This document shows positions 9,299-56,481 of a stretch of 64,000 nt of DNA, piece after piece (position 1 is the stretch's first letter; the number at the start of each line of letters is the position of its first letter). The stretch spans positions 1 through 64,000 of the IMG/VR virus record IMGVR_UViG_3300025098_000012. One strand, written 5' to 3'. The notes under the pieces were generated by a model. The model ran no database searches. It was not told the origin of the DNA and was given only the letters and a program-made list of their open reading frames with translations. Both the position numbers and the translations under genes were made by a program.

Positions 9299-12200
9299 TA
9301 TCTTCTCTCCTCTTCATAAGTGAAGCTGAGATCGCCCACTTGAAAGTAACTAAAGTTGTTTAATCTAATCTCACCCACCACACCTGTTCCATTGCCACAA
9401 GTGTAGTTCACCTCAATGTCGTAATCCAAAGGTGTTTTACCTAACGGTAATGAGATCAGAAGTTTCCGAGCAGAGTTAGGGATCTCTGTTAGAACTCCGT
9501 TAGTGCTGATGTAGGCTTTCTCCAAACCTACGATGCTTCCTTTCACTCCGATCCAGTTAGAGGCATTTTCTCTTTGTCCTAGCGATAGCGTTTCGATTTC
9601 TGTTCGGTTCAAAAACACCCGAACATTTGATCCACCGCTAGTGGCAGGAACATGGTCTAGTTGCACATCCATGAGCCACACTTTATGACTAGAGCTTGTA
9701 AACTCTGTAATCTCTATCGGCACTGTGGGGTTCACTTCTTCACGAAGGATTTGATCTCCTTCGGTCAATGAAAGCTCTGTCAAAGGAACAGACACATAAG
9801 AAACACCTCGTACAGAGTCAATCGCCCGAATGAAATCGGAGGGGTAAAGATTACCCCCAAGAGTTGTTTCTGTTATGAGGTTGAACAATGAGGCTTTGAT
9901 GATCGAGTCAACACTCGTAGCAGATACCCCTTGTTCTAAGTAGACAAGACCTTTCACATTCACTCGAACAGGGGTCACTTCTTTTACGAGGACATCTGCT
10001 CCCATGTGCTTTTGCTCATCAACCTCTAGCTGTAAGTTAGAGACTACGAGGTTTGTCTGATAAGTAACTGTAATGTTTTCTAGGTACTCATAATCGACAA
10101 ATACCGTCTGACCCGATGTGATTGTGCTTGTTGTAGTCCTCTTAATCGTTGTCAGATCACCATTCACTTCAATCACATAATCTGGTGTCGTAGAGGTGAG
10201 AGGGCTAGAAAAGGTATTGCCATTTGAGTCTTTGGCTACGATGGTTGTGATGTCGATCCCACGATTAGATAGGGTTTCGGTGTAGAGTTCATTGAGGGTC
10301 TGTTGTTCGGCTGTGATTGAGATGATCTTCTCTAATCCGTCATTATCAATGATGATGTAGTCTTGAGCTTTTGATGACTGTCCTTGCACAAGAGGATCTT
10401 CAGTTTTGTAAAAGGTGTAGCTGAGATCAGTACCGTCTGCTTTACGAACAGAAATCACTTGTCTGACAGGTTGTCTATCTAGCACGACTTTATTAGTCAC
10501 ATCGGTTCGATAATCACCTAAGATAATGTCGGTCATACGATATGTGGGTTGAGGTATGGTGTCATCGAGGATAAGGGTTTTACCCTCAGAAATAGTTGCT
10601 CCTGTAAGGTCAAAGAACTGACCATTTGTTTGGTTTTTAAGTCCGAATGTACCTGCTCGATCAATCATTTGAAATAGGGGGTTCTCTGTGGTGGCATCAG
10701 ATGCTTGGAACTTGTACGCACCCTCTGACTGTATCGGGATGAACCTTGAGTCTCTTCTTGATTTGTAAGACGGAGCATATACATCGGTCACTCGGCTCAA
10801 CAGCTCTCCCCTAACCCAAATGTCTACCTTACCTCCTTGATCGTTGTCTCGGAGCATATATGGGTTGTCTGCATCTATAACCTCATAACCTAAGACACCT
10901 GCTGACTCTCTAGCTACTCGTTCATAACCAGCTCTTGTACCTACATCTACAGAAGATATGTAGGTCATTGCTCGTGTCATCAGTTCTTGGTTTGTCTCTC
11001 TTGTAGACCCACCGAATGTAGGTGCATTGTTAATCACACTTAACCCCAATGGAGCACCTGTTGTGATTTGACCCGATGTTACATTCCCACTCAGACCAGC
11101 TGTGTCAGCTTGAATAGGTAAGGTGATTTCATATCTGCGTGTGATAGGGTTGTAAAAGTTAGGTGCTTCAGAAACTGTGATCGTTCCAGCTTGAACAGTC
11201 CGAAATCTGACACCACTACTAGAGATGAGTTGTCCAATAGGTACGATAAGGTCAAATGTAGGCAGACTCCTTGAGAAAAAAGTAGCTTCACCTCTCGCAA
11301 CTTGCCCCGACAGTCTGACGATCCCTAGATTAGATGCTAGGCGATCAAAACAGATGTCGATAAGGTTTTGTACCTGTGTGTCGGTATCTAAGAAGTATGC
11401 CTCTTTTAAGAGCTGTTTGTAGCTAGAGTTTGATACAAAGATGGAATCCCCTAATCCTGTAGGGTCATCTATATCGTTAAGAGACACAAAGTTGGTCGCC
11501 TTGTAACAGAAATCTAAGAGGACTCTAATACGAGAAACCTCAGAGACAACAGGGTCAATGAATAAGTCTCTTATAGCTGACCCTGCTTGAACAGACGCTG
11601 TGGGATCTGTATCATAAATAGCTGAGATCATACTTTCTGTAATCTGTGAGTCAGTCACATTTGGTAAGGTCGTGTTGATGAGTTGTAAGTTGATAGGTGC
11701 TGACCCGACCTCAACACTAAATGCAGACTCCACTGATTGGTTTTCTACAACTTTGACTGCTGTAATGACATAATAAAGAGGTGTGTTTACATTGAGAGAA
11801 GAAAATTCACCAATCTCTATTGTGTTCGCAGAGTTAGGACTAGTTCGATTGTGTCTGAAGGATACCTTTGTCTCCAACTCGATTGAGGAGACACTTGTTG
11901 CGACCCTTAATCGAGCCACGCTCTCAGCGATCTCTTGTGTTCCAACATCGCTCTCTGTCGTGTTCTGTAGGGCTTTTATAGTGAGAACATTCGGATCTTC
12001 TTCGATGGCTTCGATGTCACTTGAGAAATCTACTAAGGGGGTAGCCTTCTCCGACTTGAACCCATAGGTGATCGGGTCGATAGGTATCTTGTTGACCTGT
12101 TGATAACCATTCCCTCCACCACTTACAGTTGAAGCGTACACATTATAAAAGCTAATCTCGGAGTCAGTATGCACCCAACTAAGGACTACATTATTATCAG

Positions 12201-12570
12201 CTCTTTCAGCTTTTATGTTGATGGGAGGTTGGGGTTTAGCTGTGTTTGAGTCTAAGCTAGAGATAACAATCAGTGTTAAAGAGGTCGTATTTGATCCATC
12301 CGTAGCTGAGATAAGGAAGCTGTTAGCTCCTTGATTTAAGTCAATCCCCTCTGAGGTATCGGGGTCTGGAAACACCCATGAACCATTACTAATAACGATG
12401 TCTGCGTCTACACCTACGGATGTAAACTCCTCATCTAAGAATGACACTGTGATTTGGTCATACCCTTCAACAAGACCATGAATGAATACTTCTTCTTTGT
12501 CGGTTGAATAGCTAGTTGATGTTGTGGAGCTGACCCCATCTGGCTTTACGATTTTTAAGCTATAACTCAT
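9298..12570 (-). CDS. Baseplate J-like wedge protein (T4 gp6/P2 gpJ family) with N-terminal Ig/FN3-like domains
   Basis: gpJ-type motifs GSAIRDLFIDP, ADTAGLSGNV, GGSTRETNQELMTRA; FN3-like segment (VVLSWVH...FYNVYAST). Confidence 0.85.
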   Translation of the reverse strand: MSYSLKIVKPDGVSSTTSTSYSTDKEEVFIHGLVEGYDQITVSFLDEEFTSVGVDADIVISNGSWVFPDPDTSEGIDLNQGANSFLISATDGSNTTSLTLIVISSLDSNTAKPQPPINIKAERADNNVVLSWVHTDSEISFYNVYASTVSGGGNGYQQVNKIPIDPITYGFKSEKATPLVDFSSDIEAIEEDPNVLTIKALQNTTESDVGTQEIAESVARLRVATSVSSIELETKVSFRHNRTSPNSANTIEIGEFSSLNVNTPLYYVITAVKVVENQSVESAFSVEVGSAPINLQLINTTLPNVTDSQITESMISAIYDTDPTASVQAGSAIRDLFIDPVVSEVSRIRVLLDFCYKATNFVSLNDIDDPTGLGDSIFVSNSSYKQLLKEAYFLDTDTQVQNLIDICFDRLASNLGIVRLSGQVARGEATFFSRSLPTFDLIVPIGQLISSSGVRFRTVQAGTITVSEAPNFYNPITRRYEITLPIQADTAGLSGNVTSGQITTGAPLGLSVINNAPTFGGSTRETNQELMTRAMTYISSVDVGTRAGYERVARESAGVLGYEVIDADNPYMLRDNDQGGKVDIWVRGELLSRVTDVYAPSYKSRRDSRFIPIQSEGAYKFQASDATTENPLFQMIDRAGTFGLKNQTNGQFFDLTGATISEGKTLILDDTIPQPTYRMTDIILGDYRTDVTNKVVLDRQPVRQVISVRKADGTDLSYTFYKTEDPLVQGQSSKAQDYIIIDNDGLEKIISITAEQQTLNELYTETLSNRGIDITTIVAKDSNGNTFSSPLTSTTPDYVIEVNGDLTTIKRTTTSTITSGQTVFVDYEYLENITVTYQTNLVVSNLQLEVDEQKHMGADVLVKEVTPVRVNVKGLVYLEQGVSATSVDSIIKASLFNLITETTLGGNLYPSDFIRAIDSVRGVSYVSVPLTELSLTEGDQILREEVNPTVPIEITEFTSSSHKVWLMDVQLDHVPATSGGSNVRVFLNRTEIETLSLGQRENASNWIGVKGSIVGLEKAYISTNGVLTEIPNSARKLLISLPLGKTPLDYDIEVNYTCGNGTGVVGEIRLNNFSYFQVGDLSFTYEEERR

Positions 12571-13607
12571 GTCAAACTCCCATCTAATGAAATGCTACCT
12601 GGTACTTCAAAAACTATATTTACGCTTACTTGACGGTTAGCACCACTACGAACTACGACATTACACAATAATGCAGTCGCATTGTCATTGAGTGCTGAAA
12701 CCTCCACAGATTGAACGCTCATTAATCTTTCTTCTTGGCTGAGGTATTGTACCCTCTTGAGGTCTTGTTGCATTTTCTGCAACTTATCTAGTGCTTGTTG
12801 AACGCTCATCCTTAATGCGACACCTACCGAAGCATTGTTCTTTTGACCGATGAGTCGGTTAGCATTTGATCCATACCAAGCGTGATATGGGTTAGATCCG
12901 ATCTCTGTAAGTAGAGTCTTAGCTATATTCTGATATAGAAGGTCTGTATCTTGTACCTTTTTAATGTCTCCATCTGTGCCGAACCTAAAGTCGTTCTCTA
13001 CTCCTGTTCCTCCACATCGCCTACAGTATCGCTTTTCGGTCGTGTAAGAGATTTCTAGTAGCCCCTCTGGTTCTAGTTCACTCTTGAACTGTATGTCGTG
13101 TCCGTTGAGTCGTGAAACCAGCCCCCAAGAAGGTGTGGTCTTTTTGGTCTTAGCGACTTGCTTTTGCCTCTTGAAACCTAGTGCTTTTAAAAGACTTCCT
13201 GTGAGGGTGAACCCAACCCCAAGTTTTTGGTCTGAAAACCTCAACGCTTTTGATGTAGTCTCTTCAACAAGGATAGCTCCGATTTGGTTTTGTATTACGG
13301 AGATGAGTGTCTTTGAGTTGTATATCTTTGGGGGTAAAGTGATTGTGTTGGAGAACCCTTCCGTAGTGGTGATTGTAAGCACATTAGATGTGCTTCTCAC
13401 CCTAAAGGGAGACACATTAGGAGTGGTGATAGTAGCCTCTCGGTTATTGCCTTGAGGTTCAAGGACGACACCATCTCGTTTAATCACTACAAGTCCAGCA
13501 CCATTGATCGGTGATGCTGGCATAATGTAGATACCATTTTGTAGCCCAACCCTCTCATATCGAATATAATGAGGGCAAGAATAAGAAATCTGTAGGTCTT
13601 CGCTCAT
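12567..13607 (-). CDS. Baseplate gp25/gpW-like sheath-initiator protein with N-terminal extension and a CxxC motif
   Basis: C-terminal gp25-like segment (LLTEIGSNPYHAWYGSNANRLIG...LMSVQSVEV...CNVVVRS); CRRCGGTG motif; first gene of the baseplate operon. Confidence 0.8.
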   Translation of the reverse strand: MSEDLQISYSCPHYIRYERVGLQNGIYIMPASPINGAGLVVIKRDGVVLEPQGNNREATITTPNVSPFRVRSTSNVLTITTTEGFSNTITLPPKIYNSKTLISVIQNQIGAILVEETTSKALRFSDQKLGVGFTLTGSLLKALGFKRQKQVAKTKKTTPSWGLVSRLNGHDIQFKSELEPEGLLEISYTTEKRYCRRCGGTGVENDFRFGTDGDIKKVQDTDLLYQNIAKTLLTEIGSNPYHAWYGSNANRLIGQKNNASVGVALRMSVQQALDKLQKMQQDLKRVQYLSQEERLMSVQSVEVSALNDNATALLCNVVVRSGANRQVSVNIVFEVPGSISLDGSLT

Positions 13608-13666
13608 GTTATCACCAGTAGTCTAGTGGTTATTTACTAGACTACCGATGATAAATAAACTAACGA

Positions 13667-15997
13667 TTAGTCTAAATCCATAAATGCTTGGTAAAGCTCT
13701 GTGTCCTCTTTTATTCCCAACGCTTTAAATAGCTCTTTAGCTTGGTTATTGAATGTTCTCCTCTCGTCCCATTTGAGTCGTACCCTAGCATTCAACGCAT
13801 CTTGTACTTCCTTCCCCCATTGAGTTAAAACTTCACCGTTATAAATCTCTTCTTTAACTTCGTTAATCGTAGAGGTAGGGATTGGACCCATTAATGAACG
13901 AACAGTATTATCACAATCGACCTTGCCTAGACCTTTTGGTACTAGAGGACTAGTTGACTCGGTTAAGCCAAGATCAAGGTAAAAACGATAGCGAACAAGT
14001 TCACTAGCAATAGCCCCAAAGAACGCTCTTAACTTGTTACCGCCTTTTGCACCTTTACCGACAATTTTTATTGCTTGGTTTCGATCTTTTTGGTTGGCGA
14101 GTTTTTCAACCCACATTTGACCGTTCATCTTGCTTGCTTTTGGTATAATCGGCTTGACTATTTGGTCAATCTTTCTAGCTAGTTCTTCTCTCTCTTTCTC
14201 ACTCATCATCTTAACGAGATCGTAAAACCCTTTCTCTTTATTAGGGAGTGTTCCAATAGTGTGAGGTATAAAGTAGGTCAGGCTGTCAACTGTCACCTCT
14301 TTTTCAGATCCTGCTACATCGAACTTTAAACTTCCTCCATTCAACAGAATGGCACACTCTACATACCAAGAGAAAGGACCTGTATCACTAAGGAATAACT
14401 TAGAGACATCCATACAGTTATCAGCGAACTTTTTGATCGCCTTAACTTTATCTTCGTCTATGAATGTCTGTGAGTTTAAGATATATCTCAGACCGACAGG
14501 GAGGAGAGGTGCTTGATGTTCTTTGATGGTATTTTGAAGGGCTACCATCGCATCTTTGTTGAAATAACGAATAGCGTAAGCCCATTCATCGTCCTTTAGA
14601 TACAGATTGGAGTCAATCATCCAATGGAATTGATCGTCCGAGAACAGCTTAGATAGCTTCTCTAACTCTACGATCTGTAGGTCGAGTTTGATTTTTTCTT
14701 CGACTACTTCTTGAAGCTCACCCTCACCCAAGTCCATACTATCAACTACAGCCTCAGCTCTTTCTTCGGCTGTTTCCACAATCATGTCAGCGGCTTCTTG
14801 AGCTTCGATAGAAGGCTCTATATTATTTATGACCCAACCACTTTCGATGAGATTTTCTTTCATCTCTTCTTTGAGTTGAAGATCTTCATCAAATTCGCCT
14901 GCTTCAAAACGAGAGAGTAGATCAAGACCATCAGCAGTTGAAAGAGTGAGTTCACCTACTTCGACTAATATGTCTCTATATGCGTCTTTTAAATCCCCAT
15001 CAAAACGACCTTCAGAGAAATCGTCATATAAAGTTTCAAAGTATTCGTGTCCAGACTTGAGGTTTCCATTTTTGACGAGTTGGTTGAGAATGACGAGCTT
15101 CTCATACAGATAATCCTCATCATCAAACTCACCACTAATCAGACGAGCCTTTAGTCTCTCTAACTCTTCGTCAGTCATTTCGTTGAGTTCGTTTTTAGAA
15201 TAGGTCTCAACCTGTTTTCTTGCGAGTCCTGGATTGTCGAAAGTTTCATCCCCTTTGCTTACCTCAAGACCTACAGGTCTGTTAATACCACCTTCATTTT
15301 TAACAACACCGAACTCAATCCTTTGTGTCTGCGTTAAAAACCTCCCCTCATAAGACATGACATTAAAAACACCTTTTTTGATAGCGTCCATCACAGATTC
15401 TGCTACGCTGGATGACCTTTGGGTTTTCTTTTGTATAGACGGGAACACATACGCATCAGATCTCATCGTCCTGCCTTCTTCAACCCGATCAATGACATCA
15501 GTGTTGTGCGACATAGACCATGAGGTTGCGGTGAGCCACAAGTCCTCAAGTGTAGTACCCACATTATAGCGTCTGTTGTTTCCTATGAAATTAGAATAGG
15601 TATCGTCTATTCCTATTTTAAGATTATTTTTAACCTTTTCATATAGGTCATTAACCATCACTGCGTGAGCATTTTTCCTTCTTAAACCTCTCATGACTTT
15701 CGACCCAAATTCAATCGCCTTATCCCCTGGATGTGGTTCGAGTATATCAAGGCTTTGTAAACTTGGTTCTCCTAGCTCTTTGAGCTTAAGCAAAGACGCA
15801 GTAGCCCAATATGCGAAGATATGGAGAAGGCTATTCTCATCTTCCTTGATAAGCCTCAGATCGGCTTGCTTTTTCATGCCAGCCGATCTGATGTAAAGCT
15901 CAAGCTCTCTTACAAGTTCTTGAGCAACTTTAGTCTTGGAGTGCAGATCAGATTTCTTGATCTGATCCAACATCTGTGTCGCTTGTTTTATATTCAT
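13667..15997 (-). CDS. Large acidic protein of unknown function, paralogue A (putative virion/internal protein)
   Basis: 776-aa ORF; first ~50 aa nearly identical to 16059-18449; preceded by the late-type motif. Confidence 0.8.
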   Translation of the reverse strand: MNIKQATQMLDQIKKSDLHSKTKVAQELVRELELYIRSAGMKKQADLRLIKEDENSLLHIFAYWATASLLKLKELGEPSLQSLDILEPHPGDKAIEFGSKVMRGLRRKNAHAVMVNDLYEKVKNNLKIGIDDTYSNFIGNNRRYNVGTTLEDLWLTATSWSMSHNTDVIDRVEEGRTMRSDAYVFPSIQKKTQRSSSVAESVMDAIKKGVFNVMSYEGRFLTQTQRIEFGVVKNEGGINRPVGLEVSKGDETFDNPGLARKQVETYSKNELNEMTDEELERLKARLISGEFDDEDYLYEKLVILNQLVKNGNLKSGHEYFETLYDDFSEGRFDGDLKDAYRDILVEVGELTLSTADGLDLLSRFEAGEFDEDLQLKEEMKENLIESGWVINNIEPSIEAQEAADMIVETAEERAEAVVDSMDLGEGELQEVVEEKIKLDLQIVELEKLSKLFSDDQFHWMIDSNLYLKDDEWAYAIRYFNKDAMVALQNTIKEHQAPLLPVGLRYILNSQTFIDEDKVKAIKKFADNCMDVSKLFLSDTGPFSWYVECAILLNGGSLKFDVAGSEKEVTVDSLTYFIPHTIGTLPNKEKGFYDLVKMMSEKEREELARKIDQIVKPIIPKASKMNGQMWVEKLANQKDRNQAIKIVGKGAKGGNKLRAFFGAIASELVRYRFYLDLGLTESTSPLVPKGLGKVDCDNTVRSLMGPIPTSTINEVKEEIYNGEVLTQWGKEVQDALNARVRLKWDERRTFNNQAKELFKALGIKEDTELYQAFMDLD

Positions 15998-16058
15998 ATA
16001 TATCTCTCTCTCTTTCCGATAGTTTACAAGAGAGATATGAATATAAATAAACTAACGA

Positions 16059-18449
16059 TTAACCTAACTGAACAAATGCCTCATATAGCTCAGTACCTTC
16101 CTCGATGCCGAACTCTTTGAATACCTTTTTAACTAAGGTGTTTAAGTCCGATTTCTTCTTGATCAAGACAGACTCTCTCGCACTTATAGCACTTTGTACT
16201 TCATTAGTCCAGTGCGGTAAAATGAGCTGATCATAACTTTCGCTCTTAACAGCGTTTAGTTCTTTTGTAGGGATGGGTCCGATGAGGTATAGGACACGAC
16301 TATCGCAGTCATTATTACCTAGACCCTTTGGTAAGTTAGTTCCCTCAGTCAGACCAATGTCGAGATAGAAACGATAACGAACAAGCTCACTAGCGATACC
16401 ACTGTAGAAGCCTTTAAGTTTACCACCACTGTTTGTGACGGTTTTATGAGCTTGCCCTGCTTTCGCTGGTATAGTTTTGTACTTTGGATTATTGTATATA
16501 GTAATGATGTTCTCCACAAAGTCAGACATCTTATAATCCAAACCGTTTGGCCTATACGGAGCAATAAGATCTTCAAGGTCTTTCGTAATCTTTGCAACCT
16601 CAGCGTCAGATGCCACAGAAAGTGCTTCAACCAATCCTTTATAAACGGATCTCGTGACTTTGAAGAACCTTAATCCCTCGACTTCAACTTTGAAGGTCTT
16701 TCCACCTGCTTTTAAAGAGACAGACCCACCGTTTAAGACGATTGCTAACTCAAGATACCAACCTAGAGGTCCTTTATTGCCACCGATAATCTTTTCAACG
16801 ACACCTTGATCCATACATTGGTCGGCAAACTCTTTGATCGCTACCACCTTTTTTTTGTCAGCAAAGACAGCAGGGTTAAAGATGTGCTTCAAACCTAGAG
16901 GTAAAAGAGGCTCTTGATGCTCTTCGATTGTGTCTTGGATAGCTCTCAAGGCTTGAGGGTCGGACTCTCTAAGAGCTAAAGCCCACTCTGTGTCATCAAG
17001 ATACAGGTTAGCATCGAGCATCCAATGAAAGCCCTCTTCGGTGAACATCTTTGACAGCTTTTTCATTTGGTCTAACTTTAGGTTGACCTTAGCGAGATCA
17101 GCAATAGCTTCTCCGAGCTTACCATCGGGTAAACTCATACCACTTACAGCGACTTCTGCCATCTCTTCAGCTTGATCTTCGATCATCTGAACAGCTTGAT
17201 CGGCATCAGTAGAGACTTCGATGTTTTCAATCAACCAACCATCATTAATGAGGTCATACTCTGCATCAGTACGATCAAGCTCATCGAGTTCACCCGAATG
17301 ATAGCTTCTGATAAGCTCATCAAGTTCATCGGTGACTGGGTTCCCTGTCAGTTCAAGAAGCTCTCTAGCGAGAGCATTTGACTCGACACTATCATATACA
17401 CCATTAAAGAAATTTGGCTTCAAGGAGTCTGAGATCAGAGCGTCATTCTTATTAATATGGTCAGATAACAAAAGCCCCTGTAGCCCCTTGAGCCACTTTA
17501 GATGTTGGTTATCAAGACTTCCATCAGTTAACTTTCCTTCGATTTCTTCCAAAGTCTCATCAGACAACCCTTGTTGTTCCATGTACTTTTGGCTGTCGGA
17601 CACACCGAGTAAGTTTTCAAGATGTCCCTCAGCAGAGAGTTGATCAAGTCTGCTGTATTCTTCGCCAGAAGATGATTGACCCTCTGTGGACTCTTGTCTT
17701 ATTTTCTTTCCGTCTACGAGAGCTATTCCTAATGCCCTTCTCTCCTCAAGACTTAGGTAGCGTCCTTTAGAAGCCATCGCACTGAATACACCCTTACGAA
17801 TAGCTTTCATAACTCTCTCAGCGATAGAGCTTCCCCCCTCGACCTTTTCCTCGATCCTTTTCCAAGGGGTTATATATGTTTCCCTACTTTCACTAGACTT
17901 AGGTATTCCACTTTTGCCTGTGACAGCCCACATCGTAGATCTCTGCCAAAGATCGTCAAGAATGTCGCTTCTTAGTCGCCTAAATTCTTTGTTATTTTTA
18001 ACAAATTGATTGAAGGTGATGTTGATGCTTTTAGAGAGAGCTGGTTTGATTTGCTCATAGAGACTGTTCAAGAAGTTTGCGTATCTTGCAACGCTTGCTT
18101 GTCGCCTTCTCATTCGACTTCTAAAACCACCTCCACCTCCACCAAGTTGGTTGAGGATCTTTGTCCCATACTCTGTGGGGGTATCAGAACCAACAGGAGG
18201 GATAGTCATCCCTTGTAACTCTGGTTCACCTGTCATCTGAGAAAGAGCGGCACTCGCCCAATAGAAGAAGATCTTCTTAAGATCTCCATCACTTTGAAGG
18301 TACAGCCTCAGATCAGCTTGCTTTTTCATTCCAGCCGATTTGATATACAGTTCAAGCTCTCTTACAAGCTCTTGAGCAACTTTAGTCTTGTTGTGGAGGT
18401 TAGATTTCTTGATCTGATTTAACATCTGATTTGCTTGTTTTATATTCAT
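16059..18449 (-). CDS. Large acidic protein of unknown function, paralogue B
   Basis: 796-aa ORF colinear with paralogue A (shared ELVRYRFYLD(L/I)GLTE, FHWM.D.NLYL, EHQ.PLLP.GL). Confidence 0.8.
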   Translation of the reverse strand: MNIKQANQMLNQIKKSNLHNKTKVAQELVRELELYIKSAGMKKQADLRLYLQSDGDLKKIFFYWASAALSQMTGEPELQGMTIPPVGSDTPTEYGTKILNQLGGGGGGFRSRMRRRQASVARYANFLNSLYEQIKPALSKSINITFNQFVKNNKEFRRLRSDILDDLWQRSTMWAVTGKSGIPKSSESRETYITPWKRIEEKVEGGSSIAERVMKAIRKGVFSAMASKGRYLSLEERRALGIALVDGKKIRQESTEGQSSSGEEYSRLDQLSAEGHLENLLGVSDSQKYMEQQGLSDETLEEIEGKLTDGSLDNQHLKWLKGLQGLLLSDHINKNDALISDSLKPNFFNGVYDSVESNALARELLELTGNPVTDELDELIRSYHSGELDELDRTDAEYDLINDGWLIENIEVSTDADQAVQMIEDQAEEMAEVAVSGMSLPDGKLGEAIADLAKVNLKLDQMKKLSKMFTEEGFHWMLDANLYLDDTEWALALRESDPQALRAIQDTIEEHQEPLLPLGLKHIFNPAVFADKKKVVAIKEFADQCMDQGVVEKIIGGNKGPLGWYLELAIVLNGGSVSLKAGGKTFKVEVEGLRFFKVTRSVYKGLVEALSVASDAEVAKITKDLEDLIAPYRPNGLDYKMSDFVENIITIYNNPKYKTIPAKAGQAHKTVTNSGGKLKGFYSGIASELVRYRFYLDIGLTEGTNLPKGLGNNDCDSRVLYLIGPIPTKELNAVKSESYDQLILPHWTNEVQSAISARESVLIKKKSDLNTLVKKVFKEFGIEEGTELYEAFVQLG

Positions 18450-19899: not shown

Positions 19900-20268
19900 C
19901 TACGGTCTTAAGCCTAAATCTAACAGGGTCTTGTAAACGACTTTATTGACTTCTTTAAGGTCATCAGTCTTTTTAATGACCCGACCATTGACCTCTACGA
20001 TTAAGTTTTTGTAGTCATATCCAGATCCACTGCTAGTGAAACCACTGATAGAAATCTTAGTCTTTGAGGCTTCAACTTTGATAACCTTCTCTCCCTTTCG
20101 GTCGAGGACACTAGTTACTTTGTGTTGCCCTTTCTTGAACATCCACTGTAGCTGTTTCTCAAATCGGCTGAGATCTTGCCACCCAATGTGGTTACTTAGT
20201 AGTCCAAAGAGCTTTGCTTCCATGTACCTAGAAGCGACTCTTTTACTAGAATTTTGATTACTCATCAT
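19900..20268 (-). CDS. Small basic protein with RVASRY leader
   Basis: N-terminal SKRVASRYMEA; overlaps the upstream gene. Confidence 0.7.
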   Translation of the reverse strand: MMSNQNSSKRVASRYMEAKLFGLLSNHIGWQDLSRFEKQLQWMFKKGQHKVTSVLDRKGEKVIKVEASKTKISISGFTSSGSGYDYKNLIVEVNGRVIKKTDDLKEVNKVVYKTLLDLGLRP

Positions 20269-20818
20269 CTGCCTCTTTCTTAGGTTCGGGTGTATCTTCT
20301 ACACCTAGTGATTTCTTGACCTTTGCTTTGAACATCTTGATTACGAACGCATTGATTGCACCAGCACAAGCACCCATATACACATCAATCATCATAAATG
20401 GCTTTGATAAGGTATAGGCGATCCCTGCTCCTGTTAGGACTGCAAAGAGTCTTATTACAGCGTCTGATTTCTCATTGCAGGTTTTGAAGATGAAAGGCTT
20501 AATGATCTGAGTCAGAGCGAGACTCAAGATAGCCGCTACCACTACAAGATAAGCATGACCTACAAAGACATCTTGCATCGTTGGTCTAGTTTCTGATTTC
20601 AAATCAATCGACTCTGCTATGTGTTTACAGGAAACACCACTTTCAGTGATCTCACATTCTTGGTTTTCTGATCCACACAGAAGTTCATTCCCCTCGATGA
20701 TTTCGCAGAGGTCAGCTCCTTCTTCCCCTTTACTACAGAGGATTGTATGAAGATCAACGAACTGACAGTTATCTGGTAGATTAACTAGTGGCTCACTTAT
20801 TGGGATATACTTTTCCAT
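20258..20818 (-). CDS. Membrane protein, holin-like candidate (Cys-rich N-terminus, ~3 TM segments, basic/acidic tail)
   Basis: Hydrophobic stretches YLVVVAAILSLALTQII, AVIRLFAVLTGAGIAYTL, VYMGACAGAINAFVI; charged C-terminus; late motif and SD hairpin upstream. Confidence 0.45.
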   Translation of the reverse strand: MEKYIPISEPLVNLPDNCQFVDLHTILCSKGEEGADLCEIIEGNELLCGSENQECEITESGVSCKHIAESIDLKSETRPTMQDVFVGHAYLVVVAAILSLALTQIIKPFIFKTCNEKSDAVIRLFAVLTGAGIAYTLSKPFMMIDVYMGACAGAINAFVIKMFKAKVKKSLGVEDTPEPKKEADDE

Positions 20819-20878: not shown

Positions 20879-21412
20879 TTACAAATGAGGGGTTCTGTCT
20901 ATTACGATGACATCACCCTCTGAGTGATACTTTTTAGCGAATGACTTCCATACCCTTAGAGCCTTATCAGAGGTAGACTTTTTGTGGCAGTAGTTAGGCA
21001 TGAACAGCAAAGGCAACCTACCATGTTTAAGGAACACTTCTTTGACCACCTCAACATACATTTGAACTCCACACCTCTGGCCTTGTAGGTCTGGGTGGAG
21101 ATAAGAATTGACAACCTCTACAACAAGAACCACAGGTTCATCTTTACTGCTATCATATCGAAACATCTCGTCCTCAAACCAATACTCTTCGGATAACTTT
21201 TCAATGTCATCTGCACAAGCAAAGTGTCCTCTACCCATCTCCTCAAGAGTGTAAGTGCCTACATGGGCTTCACAGTGTCCTCTGTATTCACCATCGACTC
21301 TTAACTCAACACTAACTTTACCACCATCGCTAGACACAACTTCGATAGTGATGTTGCCCTTTTGGTATTTAGCTTTCATGTAGCGACTAGCGACTCTTTG
21401 ATAAGGCTTCAT
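20879..21412 (-). CDS. GNAT-fold acetyltransferase-like protein with RVASRY leader
   Basis: GNAT motif-A-like SYLHPDLQGQRCGVQMY followed by SDKALRVWKSF. Confidence 0.55.
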   Translation of the reverse strand: MKPYQRVASRYMKAKYQKGNITIEVVSSDGGKVSVELRVDGEYRGHCEAHVGTYTLEEMGRGHFACADDIEKLSEEYWFEDEMFRYDSSKDEPVVLVVEVVNSYLHPDLQGQRCGVQMYVEVVKEVFLKHGRLPLLFMPNYCHKKSTSDKALRVWKSFAKKYHSEGDVIVIDRTPHL

Positions 21413-22314
21413 ACTGGTTGTCCCTGTTCGTTTACTAAACCTTTAGTGTAGAGGGCATATAACTGTATGCCAACAGCAGGAACTAAGATAGCGTTCCAAC
21501 CGATTGATAGAGACTTAGCGAGCCAACCACCAGGTATGCCTGGGAATAAAAGACTTACGATAAATCCAATCCCACTTTCGGGTAGACTTTCAAGTAAGTC
21601 CGTCCACGAGATCATGCCTAGAAATCCTTTTATCAAGTCTGAGATCTTCCAACTGATCTCTGTAACATTGATCCATATGACCCAATAGAGATATGCTTTA
21701 GCAGGCATCGTAATGAGCTTCAGCAAAGGGTGCTTCTCTAAAAAGTTATCTATCCATTCCGACATATTTTTTGCTCTGCCGACCACAGGTGTGATCGTCT
21801 TTGACAACCATTTACCTAGTTCACCTGTCTTTCCTCCATGCTTTTCAAGTACGCTTTCAATAATGGAAGTGAAGGTAGGAGCGTTAGATGCGTATAGGAA
21901 CAGAAAGTGAATGATCTTACTGTCTTTCTTCATCTTCTTCTTTAGATTACCCCACCATCTCGCACCCTCGTCTAAGAGGTTTTGAAACTTCTTCGATAGT
22001 TCAAAGTAGAGCTTTGCAGGGTTCGTTGATGTGATCCCTAAAACCTCTTTGAACTTTTCCCAAAGTTTAGGAGCTTTTTGAAACGCTTGGTACAGCTCTC
22101 TTAGCTTCTTACCTAGACCTTTGATGATCGCTGTTTTGTTGTGAGCTTGTCGGAGCATACCCTCGCCAAACACGCTCAATACTCGGACATCTATCTCACG
22201 AGTGATTGTGCTTGAGACTCTAGTGTTGGGGCTGTTTTGGATCGCCCACATTGACGCTCTTAATGAAACATTTCTATGGTAATGTCGAGTAGCGACTCTC
22301 TGATATGGCTTCAT
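21409..22314 (-). CDS. Putative virion protein with RVATRHY leader and hydrophobic C-terminal helices
   Basis: MKPYQRVATRHY; C-terminal AYLYWVIWINV and GIGFIVSLLFPGIPGGWL...AILVPAVGIQLYAL; SD AAGGAG. Confidence 0.7.
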   Translation of the reverse strand: MKPYQRVATRHYHRNVSLRASMWAIQNSPNTRVSSTITREIDVRVLSVFGEGMLRQAHNKTAIIKGLGKKLRELYQAFQKAPKLWEKFKEVLGITSTNPAKLYFELSKKFQNLLDEGARWWGNLKKKMKKDSKIIHFLFLYASNAPTFTSIIESVLEKHGGKTGELGKWLSKTITPVVGRAKNMSEWIDNFLEKHPLLKLITMPAKAYLYWVIWINVTEISWKISDLIKGFLGMISWTDLLESLPESGIGFIVSLLFPGIPGGWLAKSLSIGWNAILVPAVGIQLYALYTKGLVNEQGQPV

Positions 22315-22377: not shown

Positions 22378-22752
22378 ATGGGAGCAGGTGTAATGCTATT
22401 ATGTGGAAACAAAACCCTCATAATGAAGAGGGACCACTACAAACACGATAAATGGTCGGGTTATTGGAACTTTCCAGGAGGTCAAGGAGAGCCAAATGAA
22501 ACGACCTATCAGACAGCTCTAAGAGAGACTGAAGAAGAGACAGGCATCACACCCGATCAATATAAAGTTGTAGATCATGTAGAGGACAAGATTTACACGA
22601 TGTATGTCGGGGTGTGTAAGGAAGAGATCGTACCTGTTTTAGATCACGAGCATACGGAGTGGGAGTGGATAGTCATCTCTAAGATACCTAGTATGACTCG
22701 TGAGATGCACCCCAAAGATTGGCGAGGGTTTAAGAAGTATTATCGGCTTTAG
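22378..22752 (+). CDS. NUDIX hydrolase
   Basis: Nudix box GGQGEPNETTYQTALRETEEETG. Confidence 0.93.
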   Translation: MGAGVMLLCGNKTLIMKRDHYKHDKWSGYWNFPGGQGEPNETTYQTALRETEEETGITPDQYKVVDHVEDKIYTMYVGVCKEEIVPVLDHEHTEWEWIVISKIPSMTREMHPKDWRGFKKYYRL

Positions 22753-22755: not shown

Positions 22756-23853
22756 TCACCAGACTTGAAAGTGAACACCTAAAGACCAAGTGTTCGACCC
22801 ATCAGTTCCGTAAACCCAACCAATACCAGGAGCGATGTTGAGGTTTTTACCCATGATGTAAGGATGCCATGTACCCATCAATCCTAGATACTGATTGGAC
22901 TCGGTTAGAGAAAAGTTAGCACCTAAACGATACTGACCTTTAACAAAGTTGACGAAACTCCCCCCTATAGATAGCCCAAACTCCCCCCCTTGATAAGTTG
23001 ACCCTACAAGTAAGCTCGGCTCGAACATCTTTAGCGTTAACCCTAAACCACCTGCGGGTACTTGGGGTATATAGATGAGTTGAGGATCAAGATTGGGATC
23101 ACCAGAATACATTTCGGACTCAAGACCCTCTATATTAATAAACTTTCCTTGATCATCAAAGTACCCACCATAAATGTGTATGCCTTGGTTCTGTACAGCA
23201 CCACTACCTAAACGAGATTGGTCTTCGCCATAACTAATCGCTACTACTTTAAACGCTAAGTTGAAGTCTACACCCGAACCTTCACCAGTCCAAAGATTTC
23301 TACTTGTAAACGAGTAAACAGGTTTACCATGTAAACGGAAAGGTGATTCCCATGTAAACTTGAAAGGTTGACACCTTTCGTCTGTTCGGTTCTCACACCA
23401 CTGTTGATCTTGTGTACTTACACCTCTCCAATCTTGAGGTGGTGGGGTTGTGGGTTTTTCTCTGTCTGTGAAGTCTCCGATGCGTGTTACACCTGCTTCT
23501 ACCCTTGACTCCATACGAACAAATCTTCGACTAATCGCATTGATTTTCGCTCCTGTCTCAGAGGTGTATCTGTCTATAGCCTGTTGTGTTCTTTGATCAA
23601 GACCACTAATGATTTCTGACGCTCTTTGTTCAAGCGTAGCTCGATCAACCATCTGAGACTGCACAGTTCCTAGTTTGGTATTTATCGCCGCAATTTTCGT
23701 AGCGTTATCATTAAGAACTCCATTTAGCTGATCTTGGATCGTAGCGTCCATCTGTTGCATTTTGTAGACAGACCAAGCGTTGCCCCCTACAGAAACCAAG
23801 AACAGGCTCAATAGAGCGTAAATACCATATTTTAGGTTCGCCAACTCAACCAT
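22756..23853 (-). CDS. Membrane-anchored coiled-coil protein with C-terminal beta-barrel-like domain (spanin-like candidate)
   Basis: N-terminal TM (YGIYALLSLFLVSVGGNAW), heptad-rich helical region, C-terminal amphipathic strands ending WSLGVHFQVW; SD AAGGAG. Confidence 0.6.
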   Translation of the reverse strand: MVELANLKYGIYALLSLFLVSVGGNAWSVYKMQQMDATIQDQLNGVLNDNATKIAAINTKLGTVQSQMVDRATLEQRASEIISGLDQRTQQAIDRYTSETGAKINAISRRFVRMESRVEAGVTRIGDFTDREKPTTPPPQDWRGVSTQDQQWCENRTDERCQPFKFTWESPFRLHGKPVYSFTSRNLWTGEGSGVDFNLAFKVVAISYGEDQSRLGSGAVQNQGIHIYGGYFDDQGKFINIEGLESEMYSGDPNLDPQLIYIPQVPAGGLGLTLKMFEPSLLVGSTYQGGEFGLSIGGSFVNFVKGQYRLGANFSLTESNQYLGLMGTWHPYIMGKNLNIAPGIGWVYGTDGSNTWSLGVHFQVW

Positions 23854-23894
23854 AGTAAATCTCCTTCGTTTAGATGGAGATACTATACCATGTC

Positions 23895-25128: not shown

Positions 25129-25188
25129 GCTTTGCCTTTTCTCATATAATAAGAGGATGCAAGCTGTACTTATAAGGAGGTGCGACAT

Positions 25189-27918
25189 ATGTTTGCCGAT
25201 ATGCTTGAGTCATTAAGACGACCAAATATACAACCCAAGTTGTGGATGAAAGATTGCGAGTTAATCTTAGGCACAAAGGAAAACCTAGACCAATGTATTG
25301 ATGAGTGTATCAACAGCGTTGCGTATGGGCTTGACCTTGAGACAACAGGTCTTGATAATCGTGTGTTCAACGGACGCACAAGAGATACGATTGTAGGGGT
25401 CTGCTTGTCAGCCCATAAGGATAAGGGGTACTATTTCCCTGTTGGTCATCAAGAGGGTGTGGAACATAACATTCCTTGGAGATTGATGTATCCTGCACTT
25501 GAGCGTCTGCTTGACCTCTCTGTGAAAGCAGAGCCTATATTCCACAACGCCGCTTTTGACCAAGAGTTTTTGGAGTTCAACGAGTACAAGTCGGGTCTTG
25601 GTGAGGAGCGTTGGGACTCATTTGAATGGCACGACACCTATATCATTCAGTATCTCTTGAACCCTCGTGAAAAAGGTGGTCGAGGACTAAAGCATTTAAC
25701 TAATGCCCACCTTGAGCGAGAGATGATTGAGCTATCAGATCTTATGCCCGATGCTCCCGACAAGAACTACTCCAAACTTGATGTGAGTTGGGAACCATGT
25801 GTTTGGTATGCCGCTAGTGATGCAATGTGTACGCTTGGACTATGGGAAGTACTTTATAAGAAGTACACCGAAGCTAAAGAACACACTAACTCGATGTATA
25901 AGTTAGAGCGTATGTGTCTACTTTCAACTCGTTGGATGCACAGAAATCGTGTCTACATTGATCGAGACACAGCCTTAAAGTATAGCCAACAGGGGCAGAA
26001 GCTATGGTTCGACTCTCTGATTGATGTCTATGATGGAGCAAAAGAAATCTTAGGTCGAGACATTACCCCTAACTATGTTCGAGTCCTTAAAGGAGATCTG
26101 AAGGGAGAAAACAAGTTTAACCACATGGAAGTGGAGGGGATGAGCTATAAGACTCGTGTAGACGAAGCTCGTAAAGAAGCCTCTCGACTTTACCCCGATG
26201 AAAAGGGAGTAGTCACTAAGGCTGTGAAGATTATCGGTAAGAGTGTAGGTACAGAGGAGATTGAGTTTCCACTTACTTATGACATCCTATCCCCTCAAAA
26301 GCTCGGCTTGTTATTTAGAGAGTTGAGTGTTCCAGGTCTTAAGGCGAGTGAAAAATCGGGTCAGGTCGTTACTTCCAAAGACATTCTTGAAGAGGTCATT
26401 GAGAAGGCTTCTGATGACTTTCCATTTATGGCTAAGGTTAAGACCTTTCGTGAGCTTGGGAAGGCAATGGGTCAGTATCTCATTCCATTTGTAGAAGATG
26501 TTGGACCAGATGGGACTCTCAAGCCTAAGTTTGATCAGTTTGCCGCTGACACAGGTCGTTTTTCATGTAAGACGAATAGTAAGCCTTGGAAAGTTAAAGA
26601 TGGAGGGTGTCGTGTTCCCTTTCAAGGCATACCTGCTACCTATGACCCAAATAAACCCGAAGCTGTTGCTAAGATGCGTTCTTGTGTGGCTGTGCGTGAT
26701 GACGATTGGTGGTTAGCGGCCATTGATTACGCAGGTGTAGAGCTTCGGCTAGTTACGAACTTGAGTCTTGAGCCTAAGTGGATCAAGGCTTTCTTTGAAT
26801 GTTCAGAATGTGGCACAGCTTACCCACAAGAAATTCAAGAAGACGGATTCGCCAAAGCACCTCCATCTAACTGCGTGAACTGTGGGTCTGATAAGATTGG
26901 AGACTTACATACGATCACAGCAGTTGCGTTTTATGGCGAGGGAGCTAAGAAGCGTGATGATTGGAAAGCGTTAAGAGGTAATGGTAAGGGTTGCAACTTT
27001 GCTTTGTCTTATGGTGGTACAGGTAAGGCTGTTCAGCGTACTATTGGTTGTTCAGCCGAAGAAGCAGATGAGAAGTTCAAGAAGTTTACATCAACTTATA
27101 GTGAACTGACTAAATGGTGGTCTAAGCAACACAACTTTGGTCGTAAGCATGGATATGTAAAGACAGGTATGGGTCGTGTTCAACCATTACCCGACATCAA
27201 GTCTGATGACTTTAGGTTTAAATCCAAAGATGAGCGTAAGGCTGTTAATGGTCCAGTACAGGGTACGAGTGCTGATGTCACCAAGTTGGCGATGAGCTTC
27301 ATCTACCAAGAGACTAAGAAGCGTGGTTGGCAAGATAAACTGATGATGATCTTGACCGTCCATGACGAAATCGTGTTCGAGATCCATAAGTCGATCTTGA
27401 AAGAGGCGATTGATATGATCTCCGAGATGATGACTCGCAACAAAGTGATTAAGCGTCTAGGTTGGCGAGTGCCTTTACTTGTCGATGTTGAGCTTGGTAA
27501 GGATTGGACTGTTCCTTTTGATGTGAAAGATGTGATTGCAGGAGAAGCAGGGGATAAGGTCATTAACGCTAAGTACAAGTGCAAGGATTGTGGTGAAAAG
27601 ACTCCTCGTGACCCTAAACCGACTGCGTGTATGCACTGTGGTTCGACTAACATTAAAATTGATTACAAAGATGACTTCATTGCCAAGATCAAGAAGCAGA
27701 CGGAACAACTTTATGCCGACTATGGGGTAAATCCCGATGAAGTTGTCAAAGAGGTGGTTGTAGAAGACCCTGTTGAGAAATCGTCCGATAAGCCCACCTT
27801 TTGTGTTGAGGGACTGACGGAAGAAATCGCAAAAAACCTGTCCGATTGGATTAAATCGCAAGATGGTGAGTATGATGTGGTATATGAAGGACGGAGTATT
27901 ATTGCATTATTAGAATGA
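25189..27918 (+). CDS. polA: Family A DNA polymerase with 3'-5' exonuclease and two zinc-ribbon insertions
   Basis: Exo motifs DLETTG, HNAAFD, YAASD; polymerase motifs A (IDYAGVELR), B (RGNGKGCNFALSYG), C (TVHDEIV). ATG 25189 has AAGGAGG 8 nt upstream (the track uses GTG 25180). Confidence 0.96.
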   Translation: MFADMLESLRRPNIQPKLWMKDCELILGTKENLDQCIDECINSVAYGLDLETTGLDNRVFNGRTRDTIVGVCLSAHKDKGYYFPVGHQEGVEHNIPWRLMYPALERLLDLSVKAEPIFHNAAFDQEFLEFNEYKSGLGEERWDSFEWHDTYIIQYLLNPREKGGRGLKHLTNAHLEREMIELSDLMPDAPDKNYSKLDVSWEPCVWYAASDAMCTLGLWEVLYKKYTEAKEHTNSMYKLERMCLLSTRWMHRNRVYIDRDTALKYSQQGQKLWFDSLIDVYDGAKEILGRDITPNYVRVLKGDLKGENKFNHMEVEGMSYKTRVDEARKEASRLYPDEKGVVTKAVKIIGKSVGTEEIEFPLTYDILSPQKLGLLFRELSVPGLKASEKSGQVVTSKDILEEVIEKASDDFPFMAKVKTFRELGKAMGQYLIPFVEDVGPDGTLKPKFDQFAADTGRFSCKTNSKPWKVKDGGCRVPFQGIPATYDPNKPEAVAKMRSCVAVRDDDWWLAAIDYAGVELRLVTNLSLEPKWIKAFFECSECGTAYPQEIQEDGFAKAPPSNCVNCGSDKIGDLHTITAVAFYGEGAKKRDDWKALRGNGKGCNFALSYGGTGKAVQRTIGCSAEEADEKFKKFTSTYSELTKWWSKQHNFGRKHGYVKTGMGRVQPLPDIKSDDFRFKSKDERKAVNGPVQGTSADVTKLAMSFIYQETKKRGWQDKLMMILTVHDEIVFEIHKSILKEAIDMISEMMTRNKVIKRLGWRVPLLVDVELGKDWTVPFDVKDVIAGEAGDKVINAKYKCKDCGEKTPRDPKPTACMHCGSTNIKIDYKDDFIAKIKKQTEQLYADYGVNPDEVVKEVVVEDPVEKSSDKPTFCVEGLTEEIAKNLSDWIKSQDGEYDVVYEGRSIIALLE

Positions 27919-34826: not shown

Positions 34827-35105
34827 TTATTCGGACTCGATTACTGCCGAACATTTGCTCGCAAACACCGACCTTCCGTCTGTGGTCAAGAACTTCCACA
34901 CACCCGACCTGTACACACTAGCGTTTGTAGGGTGTCGGAGGGTCTGAAAGTTGACCCACCCATTCGGCATCTCGCACGAGATGGTGTAGACCTTACCTGC
35001 TTCGACCGAAGTCGATGGTTTGGTTTCGAGATGGTTCTCGTATTGTGGGCTTCTTCCACAGCCCACAGCGAGTAAGGCTAAGAGTGTAAAAGTAAGGGCT
35101 TTCAT
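34827..35105 (-). CDS. Small lipoprotein
   Basis: Signal peptide MKALTFTLLALLAVG-C with lipobox; two further Cys. Confidence 0.75.
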   Translation of the reverse strand: MKALTFTLLALLAVGCGRSPQYENHLETKPSTSVEAGKVYTISCEMPNGWVNFQTLRHPTNASVYRSGVWKFLTTDGRSVFASKCSAVIESE

Positions 35106-56479: not shown

Positions 56480-56481
56480 TC

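What the first reader, a model, noticed from the sequence alone, without database searches (positions are those of the whole stretch)
22756..23853. Single protein that could span the Gram-negative envelope: N-terminal TM, coiled coil, C-terminal beta-barrel
Seen: uncleaved-type N-terminal TM, ~100 aa of helical heptads, a middle beta region, then at least six alternating amphipathic strands ending in an aromatic residue (SLGVHFQVW), as in BAM beta-signals. Established: i-spanins have an N-terminal TM plus coiled coil; the u-spanin T1 gp11 uses an outer-membrane lipoprotein end. Inference: an inverse one-component spanin anchored in the outer membrane by a barrel, or a phage-encoded envelope bridge or receptor-blocking protein.
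Basis: inference. Interest (0 to 1): 0.66.

Follow-up and report, generated by a model that had tools for sequence, protein, structure and literature searches.

The report
Jumbo-phage inner-to-outer-membrane bridging protein candidate
A conserved protein of uncultured giant phages has an inner-membrane anchor, a helical stalk and a six-stranded tail that looks built for the outer membrane, so one chain may bridge the whole Gram-negative envelope; what it does is untested.

Summary
The ORF is real: window 22756-23853, minus strand, 365 aa, GGAG ribosome site. The described anatomy holds: a 22-residue uncharged N-terminal segment, about 95 aa of amphipathic helix, a Pro-rich linker with an invariant Cys pair, a middle beta domain, and exactly six C-terminal strands ending in Trp.

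The family is small: 39 hits among 1.84 billion representatives. It occurs only in uncultured phage contigs, many of 100-375 kb. It has no Pfam, PHROG or PDB sequence match.

AlphaFold2 on residues 126-365 gives pLDDT 84, and 95-98 on the last six strands. They form an up-and-down meander closest to a designed six-stranded barrel (Z 10.2) and next to 8-stranded outer-membrane barrels (Z 5-7). One strand face is large and hydrophobic (0.2% charged) with aromatics at both strand ends. The other is Gly/Ser/Ala/Asn and more conserved. This argues for a membrane-embedded sheet.

Six strands are too few for a canonical monomeric barrel, and the terminal motif is out of register with the classical BAM signal.

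A spanin role is plausible but unsupported by context. The gene sits between DNA polymerase A and NUDIX, and the genome has a separate Rz-like candidate and a distant amidase.

Verdict: architecture confirmed, outer-membrane insertion likely but unproven, function open.

The parts
22756..23853 (-). Whole ORF, 365 codons plus stop (P0001)
   Evidence: Thirty close homologues of 354-367 aa. Thirty-nine hits in 1.84 billion representatives.
23861..23864 (-). Shine-Dalgarno GGAG, 8 nt upstream of the ATG at 23853
   Evidence: Read directly.
23764..23829 (-). Residues 9-30: an uncharged 22-residue hydrophobic segment, read as an N-in signal anchor. Conserved W27, Y30 and K31 lie at its periplasmic end.
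   Evidence: Hydropathy. Invariant W27, Y30 and K31. A signal-peptidase-like site in only 16 of 47 members. Cleavage in this subclade is not excluded.
23479..23763 (-). Residues 31-125: amphipathic helical stalk with conserved motifs (TIQxQLxG, LGTVKSxMV, IISxLDxKTQ)
   Evidence: Periodicity. Low-confidence AlphaFold2 helices at 7-43, 46-60, 71-83 and 87-100. Invariant Q42, G45, S66, M68, T89 and Q90.
23359..23478 (-). Residues 126-165: Pro-rich linker (TTPPPQDW) and a short helix carrying the invariant pair C153/C161, a likely periplasmic disulfide
   Evidence: Invariant P138, W142, C153 and C161 in the close-relative alignment A1. Helix at model residues 22-30. The disulfide is an inference.
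23104..23358 (-). Residues 166-250: middle beta domain, with ordinary charge content (16% charged in its strands)
   Evidence: Strands at pLDDT about 78-89. Charge content. Its fold was not searched on its own.
23029..23103 (-). Residues 251-275: variable, low-confidence connecting loop
   Evidence: pLDDT about 63-65. Least conserved segment among close relatives.
22759..23028 (-). Residues 276-365: six-stranded amphipathic up-and-down beta meander ending FQVW. This is the most conserved part of the protein.
   Evidence: pLDDT 92-98. Z 10.2 to 9xzt_A and Z 5-7 to outer-membrane barrels. Face statistics and aromatic belts. Identity of 87-92% here where the stalk is 65-79%.

Best explanation
The protein is a single-pass, N-in inner-membrane protein whose whole remaining length lies in the periplasm.

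A helical stalk of about 95 residues, a Pro-rich linker, a disulfide-stapled helix and a soluble beta domain carry the C-terminal 90 residues up to the outer membrane. That tail is a six-stranded amphipathic beta meander. It sits in the outer membrane either as an unusually small barrel or as a subunit of a shared oligomeric barrel. One polypeptide would then tie the two membranes together.

The function I commit to is a one-component, spanin-like device. It would be held extended by the peptidoglycan mesh during infection. Once the wall is degraded, its segmented stalk would collapse, pulling and destabilising or fusing the outer membrane.

Shown: the ORF, the domain order, the family conservation, the strand pattern and its face chemistry.

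Inferred: the topology, the disulfide, outer-membrane insertion, oligomeric state and the whole functional step.
For: - Domain order and conservation hold across 47 homologues.
- The N-terminal uncharged 22-mer carries a net positive charge on its N-terminal flank in most members. It has no conserved peptidase site.
- The invariant Cys pair in the main clade fits an oxidising compartment.
- The C-terminal six strands are modelled with high confidence.
- Structural neighbours after a designed six-stranded barrel are a designed transmembrane barrel and then OprF, OmpA, PagL, NspA, OmpW and CarO.
- 26 large hydrophobic positions are 0.2% charged. They swap freely between aliphatic and aromatic residues.
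- 20 small positions have a mean volume of 93 cubic angstroms, are more conserved and are almost never charged.
- Aromatics concentrate at strand ends and aliphatics at mid-strand.
- 45 of 47 members end in W, Y or F.
- The tail is the most conserved region.
- Stalk, linker and beta domain together are long enough to cross a periplasm. This is an inference from lengths.
- One distant homologue lies next to a Peptidase_M23 gene.
Against: - Six strands are below the eight of every known monomeric outer-membrane barrel.
- The top structural match is a soluble design, and I could not inspect coordinates to see which face points outward.
- The terminal motif is out of register with the classical beta-signal.
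- There is no sequence link to any outer-membrane protein or spanin family.
- BAM-type insertion of a chain still tethered to the inner membrane has no precedent that I know of.
- Genomic context is replication and early-like, not lysis.
- The genome has its own Rz-like candidate.
- The homotrimer test gave no answer.
- The host is unknown, so even a diderm envelope is assumed.
Confidence: 0.35

Rival explanations
1. Same envelope-spanning or inner-membrane-anchored architecture, but the job is protective rather than lytic. It would be an early or middle gene product that blocks superinfection or stabilises and remodels the envelope during the long jumbo-phage cycle. It would act by occupying or plugging an outer-membrane or periplasmic site that incoming phages need, or by tethering the membranes.
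For: - The gene is the last of a short operon that diverges from the DNA polymerase A gene. It sits among replication and nucleotide-metabolism genes in all related genomes examined.
- It evolves much faster than its neighbour. NUDIX is 97.6% identical where this protein is 71% identical. That fits a host- or phage-interacting surface.
- The genome already has an Rz-like candidate.
Against: - There is no homology to any known exclusion protein, and PADLOC was not searched.
- The fast-evolving parts are the stalk and linker. The outer tail is highly conserved.
- Gene position is a weak guide in jumbo phages, whose lysis genes are often scattered.
Confidence: 0.25
2. The C-terminal domain is not in the outer membrane. 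The protein is an inner-membrane-anchored periplasmic protein, i-spanin-like or regulator-like. Its small six-stranded barrel is soluble, or is buried in a homo- or hetero-oligomer that hides its hydrophobic face.
For: - The best fold match, at Z 10.2, is a soluble designed n=6 barrel.
- Six strands do not make a known outer-membrane barrel.
- The beta-signal register is non-canonical.
- No outer-membrane protein family matches.
Against: - Thirty-odd large hydrophobic or aromatic side chains are hard to fit inside a barrel of about 6 angstrom radius. This is my own rough geometric estimate, not a tool result.
- The other face would then be a solvent-exposed surface made of Gly, Ser, Ala and Asn with 4.5% charge. 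It is also more conserved than the supposed core, the opposite of what soluble proteins show.
- Aromatic belts sit at both strand ends.
Confidence: 0.25
3. The N-terminal segment is a cleaved Sec signal peptide, at least in this subclade. The mature protein is an outer-membrane protein with a periplasmic coiled-coil stalk, like OmpM or DcaP. It would not be attached to the inner membrane.
For: - The sequence VSVGG-NA|W has a helix breaker and small residues at -3 and -1.
- Hydropathy of the segment is moderate (1.3-1.6) in the main clade.
Against: - The site is absent in 31 of 47 members, while the hydrophobic segment and the following W-x-x-Y-K are kept.
- The uncharged stretch is 22 residues, long for a signal peptide h-region.
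- The distant clade has strongly hydrophobic segments with means of 2-3.
Confidence: 0.15

Closest known systems
Phage T1 gp11 unimolecular spanin
   Same: One polypeptide is proposed to be fixed in both membranes, with a beta-rich periplasmic part. It has the same logical role in the envelope.
   Different: gp11 is about 130 aa and is held in the outer membrane by an N-terminal lipoylated Cys and in the inner membrane by a C-terminal helix (my own knowledge). Here the polarity is reversed. There is no lipobox, the protein is 365 aa, and the outer end is an amphipathic beta meander. No sequence similarity was found.
Lambda Rz / Rz1 two-component spanin (Rz-like i-spanins)
   Same: N-terminal type II anchor followed by a segmented helical periplasmic domain. 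The Pro-rich segment is reminiscent of Rz1.
   Different: - There is no downstream or embedded lipoprotein gene. The next gene is a convergent NUDIX.
- The PHROG Rz-like match is insignificant at E 0.27.
- There is no profile similarity to the genome's own Rz-like candidate.
- An extra 240-residue beta region is present.
[quoted passage not shown]
Small 8-stranded outer-membrane barrels (OmpA/OprF N-domain, OmpW, NspA, PagL; phage lambda Lom)
   Same: Up-and-down meander, aromatic belts, a Gly-rich inward face and a C-terminal aromatic residue. Z is 5-6 over 81-88 residues.
   Different: It has six strands, not eight. All loops are very short (2-5 residues). The lumen face has almost no charged residues. 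There is no Pfam match. The N-terminus is an anchor rather than a conserved cleavable signal.
OmpM/SlpA and DcaP (periplasmic coiled-coil stalk plus C-terminal outer-membrane barrel)
   Same: The order is an inner-side anchor or stalk, then a coiled coil, then an outer-membrane beta domain at the C-terminus. DcaP appears among weak Foldseek rows.
   Different: Those proteins have 16-18-stranded trimeric porin barrels and bind peptidoglycan or nothing at the inner end (my own knowledge). This protein has a membrane helix and six strands. No homology was detected.
BBn6, a designed six-stranded beta barrel (PDB 9XZT)
   Same: Closest backbone match: Z 10.2, rmsd 2.5 angstroms over 83 of 90 residues.
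   Different: BBn6 is a soluble design with a hydrophobic core. Its authors report that the fold is rarely if ever seen in nature (PMC12478100). The phage domain has a Gly/Ser-rich conserved face and an uncharged hydrophobic face.

Membership tests
Rz-like i-spanin | N-terminal type II transmembrane anchor | tested here: met
   A 22-residue uncharged segment at residues 9-30, conserved in position across the family. No dedicated topology predictor was available.
Rz-like i-spanin | Cognate o-spanin lipoprotein gene embedded in, overlapping or immediately downstream of the gene | tested here: not met
   No lipobox ORF lies inside or after the gene. The next gene is a convergent NUDIX.
Rz-like i-spanin | Detectable similarity to established i-spanin families | tested here: not met
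   phrog_89 at E 0.27 only. hhalign probability of 2% against the genome's own Rz-like candidate.
Unimolecular spanin (T1 gp11 type) | N-terminal lipobox and outer-membrane lipoprotein signal | tested here: not met
   There is no Cys in the first 150 residues. The lipobox scan is negative here.
Unimolecular spanin (T1 gp11 type) | C-terminal transmembrane helix | tested here: not met
   The only hydrophobic helix-length segment is N-terminal. The C-terminus is beta.
Spanins in general | Required for outer-membrane disruption; complements a lambda Rz/Rz1 defect | not testable with these tools
   Needs expression and lysis assays.
Spanins in general | Location in or near a lysis cassette | tested here: not met
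   Neighbours are DNA polymerase A, NUDIX, an SNase-like nuclease and GNAT-like paralogues. The Amidase_2 domain is at genome position 146 kb. This is a usual feature, not a defining one.
Outer-membrane beta-barrel proteins (BAM substrates) | Even number, eight or more, of amphipathic transmembrane strands closing a barrel | tested here: not met
   The number is even, but only six strands have the membrane-type pattern. A shared oligomeric barrel is not excluded. The trimer test gave no answer.
Outer-membrane beta-barrel proteins (BAM substrates) | Lipid-facing hydrophobic face with aromatic girdles | tested here: met
   The hydrophobic face is 0.2% charged. Aromatic fractions are 0.5-0.96 at strand ends and 0-0.1 at mid-strand. 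The direction of the faces in the model could not be inspected.
Outer-membrane beta-barrel proteins (BAM substrates) | C-terminal beta-signal: terminal aromatic residue in phase with hydrophobic positions 3, 5, 7 and 9 | tested here: inconclusive
   The terminal residue is W, Y or F in 45 of 47 members. The conserved hydrophobic residues are at positions 2, 4, 6 and 8 from the end.
Outer-membrane beta-barrel proteins (BAM substrates) | Cleavable Sec signal peptide | tested here: inconclusive
   A G-N-A|W site is present in this protein and in 16 of 47 relatives. SignalP was not available.
Outer-membrane beta-barrel proteins (BAM substrates) | Sequence membership of a known outer-membrane protein family | tested here: not met
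   No Pfam hit at E up to 10 for six C-terminal domains. No hit in the PDB sequence profile search.

The most novel reading that the evidence does not exclude
This would be a third architectural class of spanin. It is a single chain with reversed polarity relative to T1 gp11, fixed in the inner membrane by an alpha helix and in the outer membrane by a minimal six-stranded beta element. That element would be monomeric or part of a shared barrel. It would be a natural example of a barrel geometry so far seen essentially only in designed proteins, and the first outer-membrane beta protein inserted while still tethered to the inner membrane.
Probability: 0.2. Interest if true: 0.85.

Novelty: new variant of a known kind. 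Interest (0 to 1): 0.58.

Why it matters
If the tail is truly in the outer membrane, three things follow.
- It would be a new way for one protein to span a diderm envelope.
- It would be a new test case for BAM-dependent or spontaneous insertion of a tethered substrate.
- It would be a natural six-stranded membrane beta unit.

If it also acts in lysis, it would extend the spanin concept. It would help explain how some uncultured giant phages breach the outer membrane. It would also give annotators a signature for a family that is now entirely hypothetical.

If the tail is soluble, the family is still a conserved, fast-evolving periplasmic protein of a jumbo-phage clade, but of ordinary interest.

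Tried and rejected
Searches that found nothing useful:
- Pfam and PHROGs on the whole protein gave nothing significant.
- Pfam on six C-terminal domains gave nothing.
- The PDB sequence profile search gave only coiled-coil noise.
- INPHARED phages gave no match by DNA or by protein, with three family members as queries.
- A scan of prokaryote genomes gave none.
- The nearest deposited genome by DNA polymerase A, LR745208.1 (485 kb), gave no match to the family profile. The tool notes that an empty answer there shows nothing.

Structure work:
- The full-length AlphaFold2 model was too poor to use (pLDDT 57.5). Its Foldseek search was uninformative.
- Foldseek against PDB, the ESM Atlas and BFVD with the good model gave only weak outer-membrane-protein-like rows. 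BFVD also gave one uncharacterised uncultured-phage relative.
- Atlas feature searches gave leads below threshold only.
- The homotrimer prediction of residues 126-365 gave no answer (score 0.16 against a mark of 0.42). It is not evidence either way.

Context of the distant branch:
- IMG/VR pattern searches with the distant branch failed.
- The word search was saturated.
- The contexts recovered for distant members were short or inconsistent.

Other:
I have no environment or expression data.
- Endolysin families PF00959, PF01464 and PF00182 were absent from the 226-kb record, which is only 73% complete.
- I considered a trimeric-autotransporter-like or TolC-like shared barrel and a beta pore-forming-toxin-like oligomeric pore. 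Neither could be tested.
- I considered a virion or ejection protein because the baseplate module is about 4 kb away. There is no evidence for or against it.

Full report
THE GENE

The window is the first 64 kb of a 226,698-base linear IMG/VR virus record that CheckV rates 73% complete. It is therefore a jumbo phage.

The ORF at 22756-23853 on the minus strand is open for 365 codons. GGAG lies 8 nt before the ATG. It is the last gene of a run of small minus-strand genes that diverges from the DNA polymerase A gene at 25180-27918. It ends 3 nt from the stop of a convergent NUDIX gene at 22378-22752.

FAMILY

- Pfam and PHROGs give nothing significant. The best PHROG hit is a tape-measure family at E 0.059. 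An Rz-like spanin family reaches only E 0.27.
- The word-index search finds 30 unnamed metagenomic proteins of 354-367 aa at 39-84% identity, plus two truncated fragments.
- An exhaustive profile search of 1.84 billion representatives finds only 39 proteins. About 15 are full-length clusters. A distant branch of 310-354 aa has the same layout.
- No prokaryote genome carries the gene.
- No deposited phage carries it either.
- Nineteen IMG/VR contigs carry it, several of 100-375 kb.
- BFVD holds one uncharacterised relative from an uncultured Caudovirales phage.

ANATOMY

Residues 9-30 form a 22-residue uncharged segment between K8 and K31.
- The following W27, Y30 and K31 are invariant in the close-relative alignment A1.
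- A small-x-small site before W27 exists in this protein, but in only 16 of 47 relatives.
- I therefore read the segment as an uncleaved anchor, without excluding cleavage in this subclade.

Residues 31-125 show strong helical amphipathic periodicity.
- The heptads are imperfect.
- Several invariant polar motifs occur.
- AlphaFold2 splits the region into four helices at low confidence.

Residues 126-165 hold a Pro-rich linker and a short helix. The helix carries the Cys pair C153/C161, invariant in the main clade. This suggests a disulfide and hence a periplasmic location, which is an inference.

Residues 166-250 form a beta domain with ordinary charge content.

Residues 276-365 form six strands joined by turns of 2-5 residues.

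STRUCTURE

The full-length model was poor (pLDDT 57.5). Folding residues 126-365 with a 47-row alignment gave pLDDT 84, and 92-98 on the six strands.

The exhaustive structural search placed this tail closest to BBn6.
- The match is Z 10.2, rmsd 2.5 angstroms over 83 residues.
- BBn6 is a designed soluble barrel with six strands and shear number 8.
- Its authors say the fold is rarely if ever found in nature (PMC12478100).

Next come a designed transmembrane barrel (Z 7.1) and then the natural outer-membrane barrels OprF, OmpA, PagL, NspA, OmpW and CarO (Z 5-6). By the tool's own guidance, only the first match stands above background.

IS THE TAIL A MEMBRANE ELEMENT?

I could not see coordinates, so I used the alignment.

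Within the six strands, 26 positions carry large hydrophobic residues.
- They are 0.2% charged and 2.5% polar.
- They exchange freely among Leu, Ile, Val, Phe, Tyr and Trp.

Twenty alternating positions carry Gly, Ser, Ala, Asn or Thr.
- Their mean volume is 93 cubic angstroms and they are 4.5% charged.
- They are more conserved than the hydrophobic positions, at 1.53 against 1.95 bits.

Aromatic residues are concentrated at both ends of the strands and aliphatic residues in the middle. The last 90 residues are 11% charged, against 28% for the rest of the protein. They hold twice as much Gly and aromatic residue as the rest.

A soluble barrel would be expected to show the reverse, with a conserved core and a variable, charged surface. 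The pattern therefore favours a hydrophobic environment around a tightly packed small-residue interior.

Three points argue against a canonical outer-membrane protein.
- There are six strands, not eight or more.
- The conserved hydrophobic residues lie at positions 2, 4, 6 and 8 from the C-terminus. The final Trp is out of phase with the classical signal.
- No outer-membrane protein family is detectable by sequence.

A shared oligomeric barrel would resolve the strand count. The one complex job, a homotrimer of residues 126-365, gave no answer.

CONTEXT AND FUNCTION

The DNA polymerase A, small genes, target, convergent NUDIX arrangement recurs in related genomes of 316 and 375 kb. NUDIX is convergent just downstream in 15 of 19 IMG/VR loci.

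The surrounding genes are as follows.
- Between the target and the baseplate module lie GNAT-like paralogues, a three-segment membrane protein and an SNase-like nuclease.
- The baseplate module begins about 4 kb further on in this window.
- The replication genes lie on the other side.

This is not a lysis cassette. Elsewhere in the same genome:
- A 101-aa protein at 111778-112083 has an N-terminal anchor and a coiled coil. It matches several Rz-like spanin PHROGs, the best at E 1.4e-4.
- The gene after it encodes a signal-peptide protein without a lipobox.
- Two lipoprotein candidates lie at 110996-111310 and at window 34827-35105.
- An Amidase_2 domain lies at 146383-146610.

Contexts of distant family members are inconsistent.
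- One is next to a Peptidase_M23 gene.
- One lies among giant tail-like ORFs beside a trypsin-like protease.
- One lies among unknown genes.

Between close relatives, the tail is 87-92% identical while the stalk is 65-79% and the linker 44-80%. The whole protein is 71% identical where the neighbouring NUDIX is 97.6% identical.

VERDICT

The architecture is real, conserved and unlike any described family.

The most economical reading is an inner-membrane-anchored chain whose C-terminal six-stranded element sits in the outer membrane. That makes it an analogue of the T1 unimolecular spanin with reversed polarity and a beta anchor.

The rival readings are an exclusion or envelope-remodelling role, a soluble or oligomer-buried tail, and a cleaved signal peptide. 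They are about as likely, taken individually, as the spanin reading.

I file it under no existing family. Features that are defining or usual for i-spanins, u-spanins and outer-membrane barrel proteins were tested and not met, as listed in the membership table.

NOT DONE

- No signal-peptide or beta-barrel predictor was available.
- No model coordinates could be inspected.
- The middle domain's fold was not searched on its own.

Noticed in passing
window 21409-22314 (-), 20879-21412 (-), 19900-20268 (-); also L002:11526-12897 and L004:12781-13299: Tandem paralogues share an N-terminal motif, MKPYQRVA(S/T)RY. In the shorter copies they also share a C-terminal FxPNYC...S..ALRVW(K/D)S motif. One relative has a faint Acetyltransf_1 hit. 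The 301-aa copy instead ends in several hydrophobic segments.
   Followed up: partly
window 20258-20818 (-): A 186-aa protein with a Cys-rich N-terminal half, two to three hydrophobic segments and a highly charged C-terminal tail. The layout is holin-like. It is conserved as a 191-aa protein in L002:12948-13523. It has no Pfam or PHROG match.
   Followed up: partly
outside the window, genome G000:C1:111778-112439 (L006:3779-4440): A 101-aa protein with an N-terminal anchor and a coiled coil hits five Rz-like spanin PHROGs, the best at E 1.4e-4. The overlapping next gene encodes a 119-aa signal-peptide protein with four Cys but no lipobox. A lipobox ORF (LLSGC) lies about 470 nt upstream, at 110996-111310.
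   Followed up: partly
window 34827-35105 (-): A 92-aa ORF with a clean lipoprotein signal (LLAVGC), next to a 412-aa gene whose relatives carry a weak N6_N4 methyltransferase hit. Its function is unknown.
   Followed up: no
outside the window, G000:C1:146383-146610 (+) (L007): The only peptidoglycan-hydrolase-type domain found in the record is Amidase_2 (E 1.4e-9), in a 324-aa open frame. It is far from both the target and the Rz-like candidate. It could be the endolysin or a virion-associated hydrolase.
   Followed up: no
window 22378-22752 (+) against 22756-23853 (-); loci L019, L020: The convergent NUDIX gene is 97.6% identical in related phages where the target protein is only 71% identical. 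Adjacent genes therefore have very different evolutionary rates, or the target has been exchanged by recombination.
   Followed up: partly
window 25180-27918 (+): The DNA polymerase A has an internal CxxC...CxxC insertion and a C-terminal extension with another CxxC...CxxC pair. Relatives show a faint HypA-like hit. The nearest deposited genome is the 485-kb uncultured phage LR745208.1, at 45.6% identity, where the match is split into three pieces over about 4.9 kb.
   Followed up: no
window 3-18449 (-), 52134-63998 (+): A run of very large ORFs (1875, 1090, 776, 796, 1206, 1455 and over 709 aa). Only the 1090-aa one has a Pfam hit, to Baseplate_J. The rest have no detectable family.
   Followed up: partly
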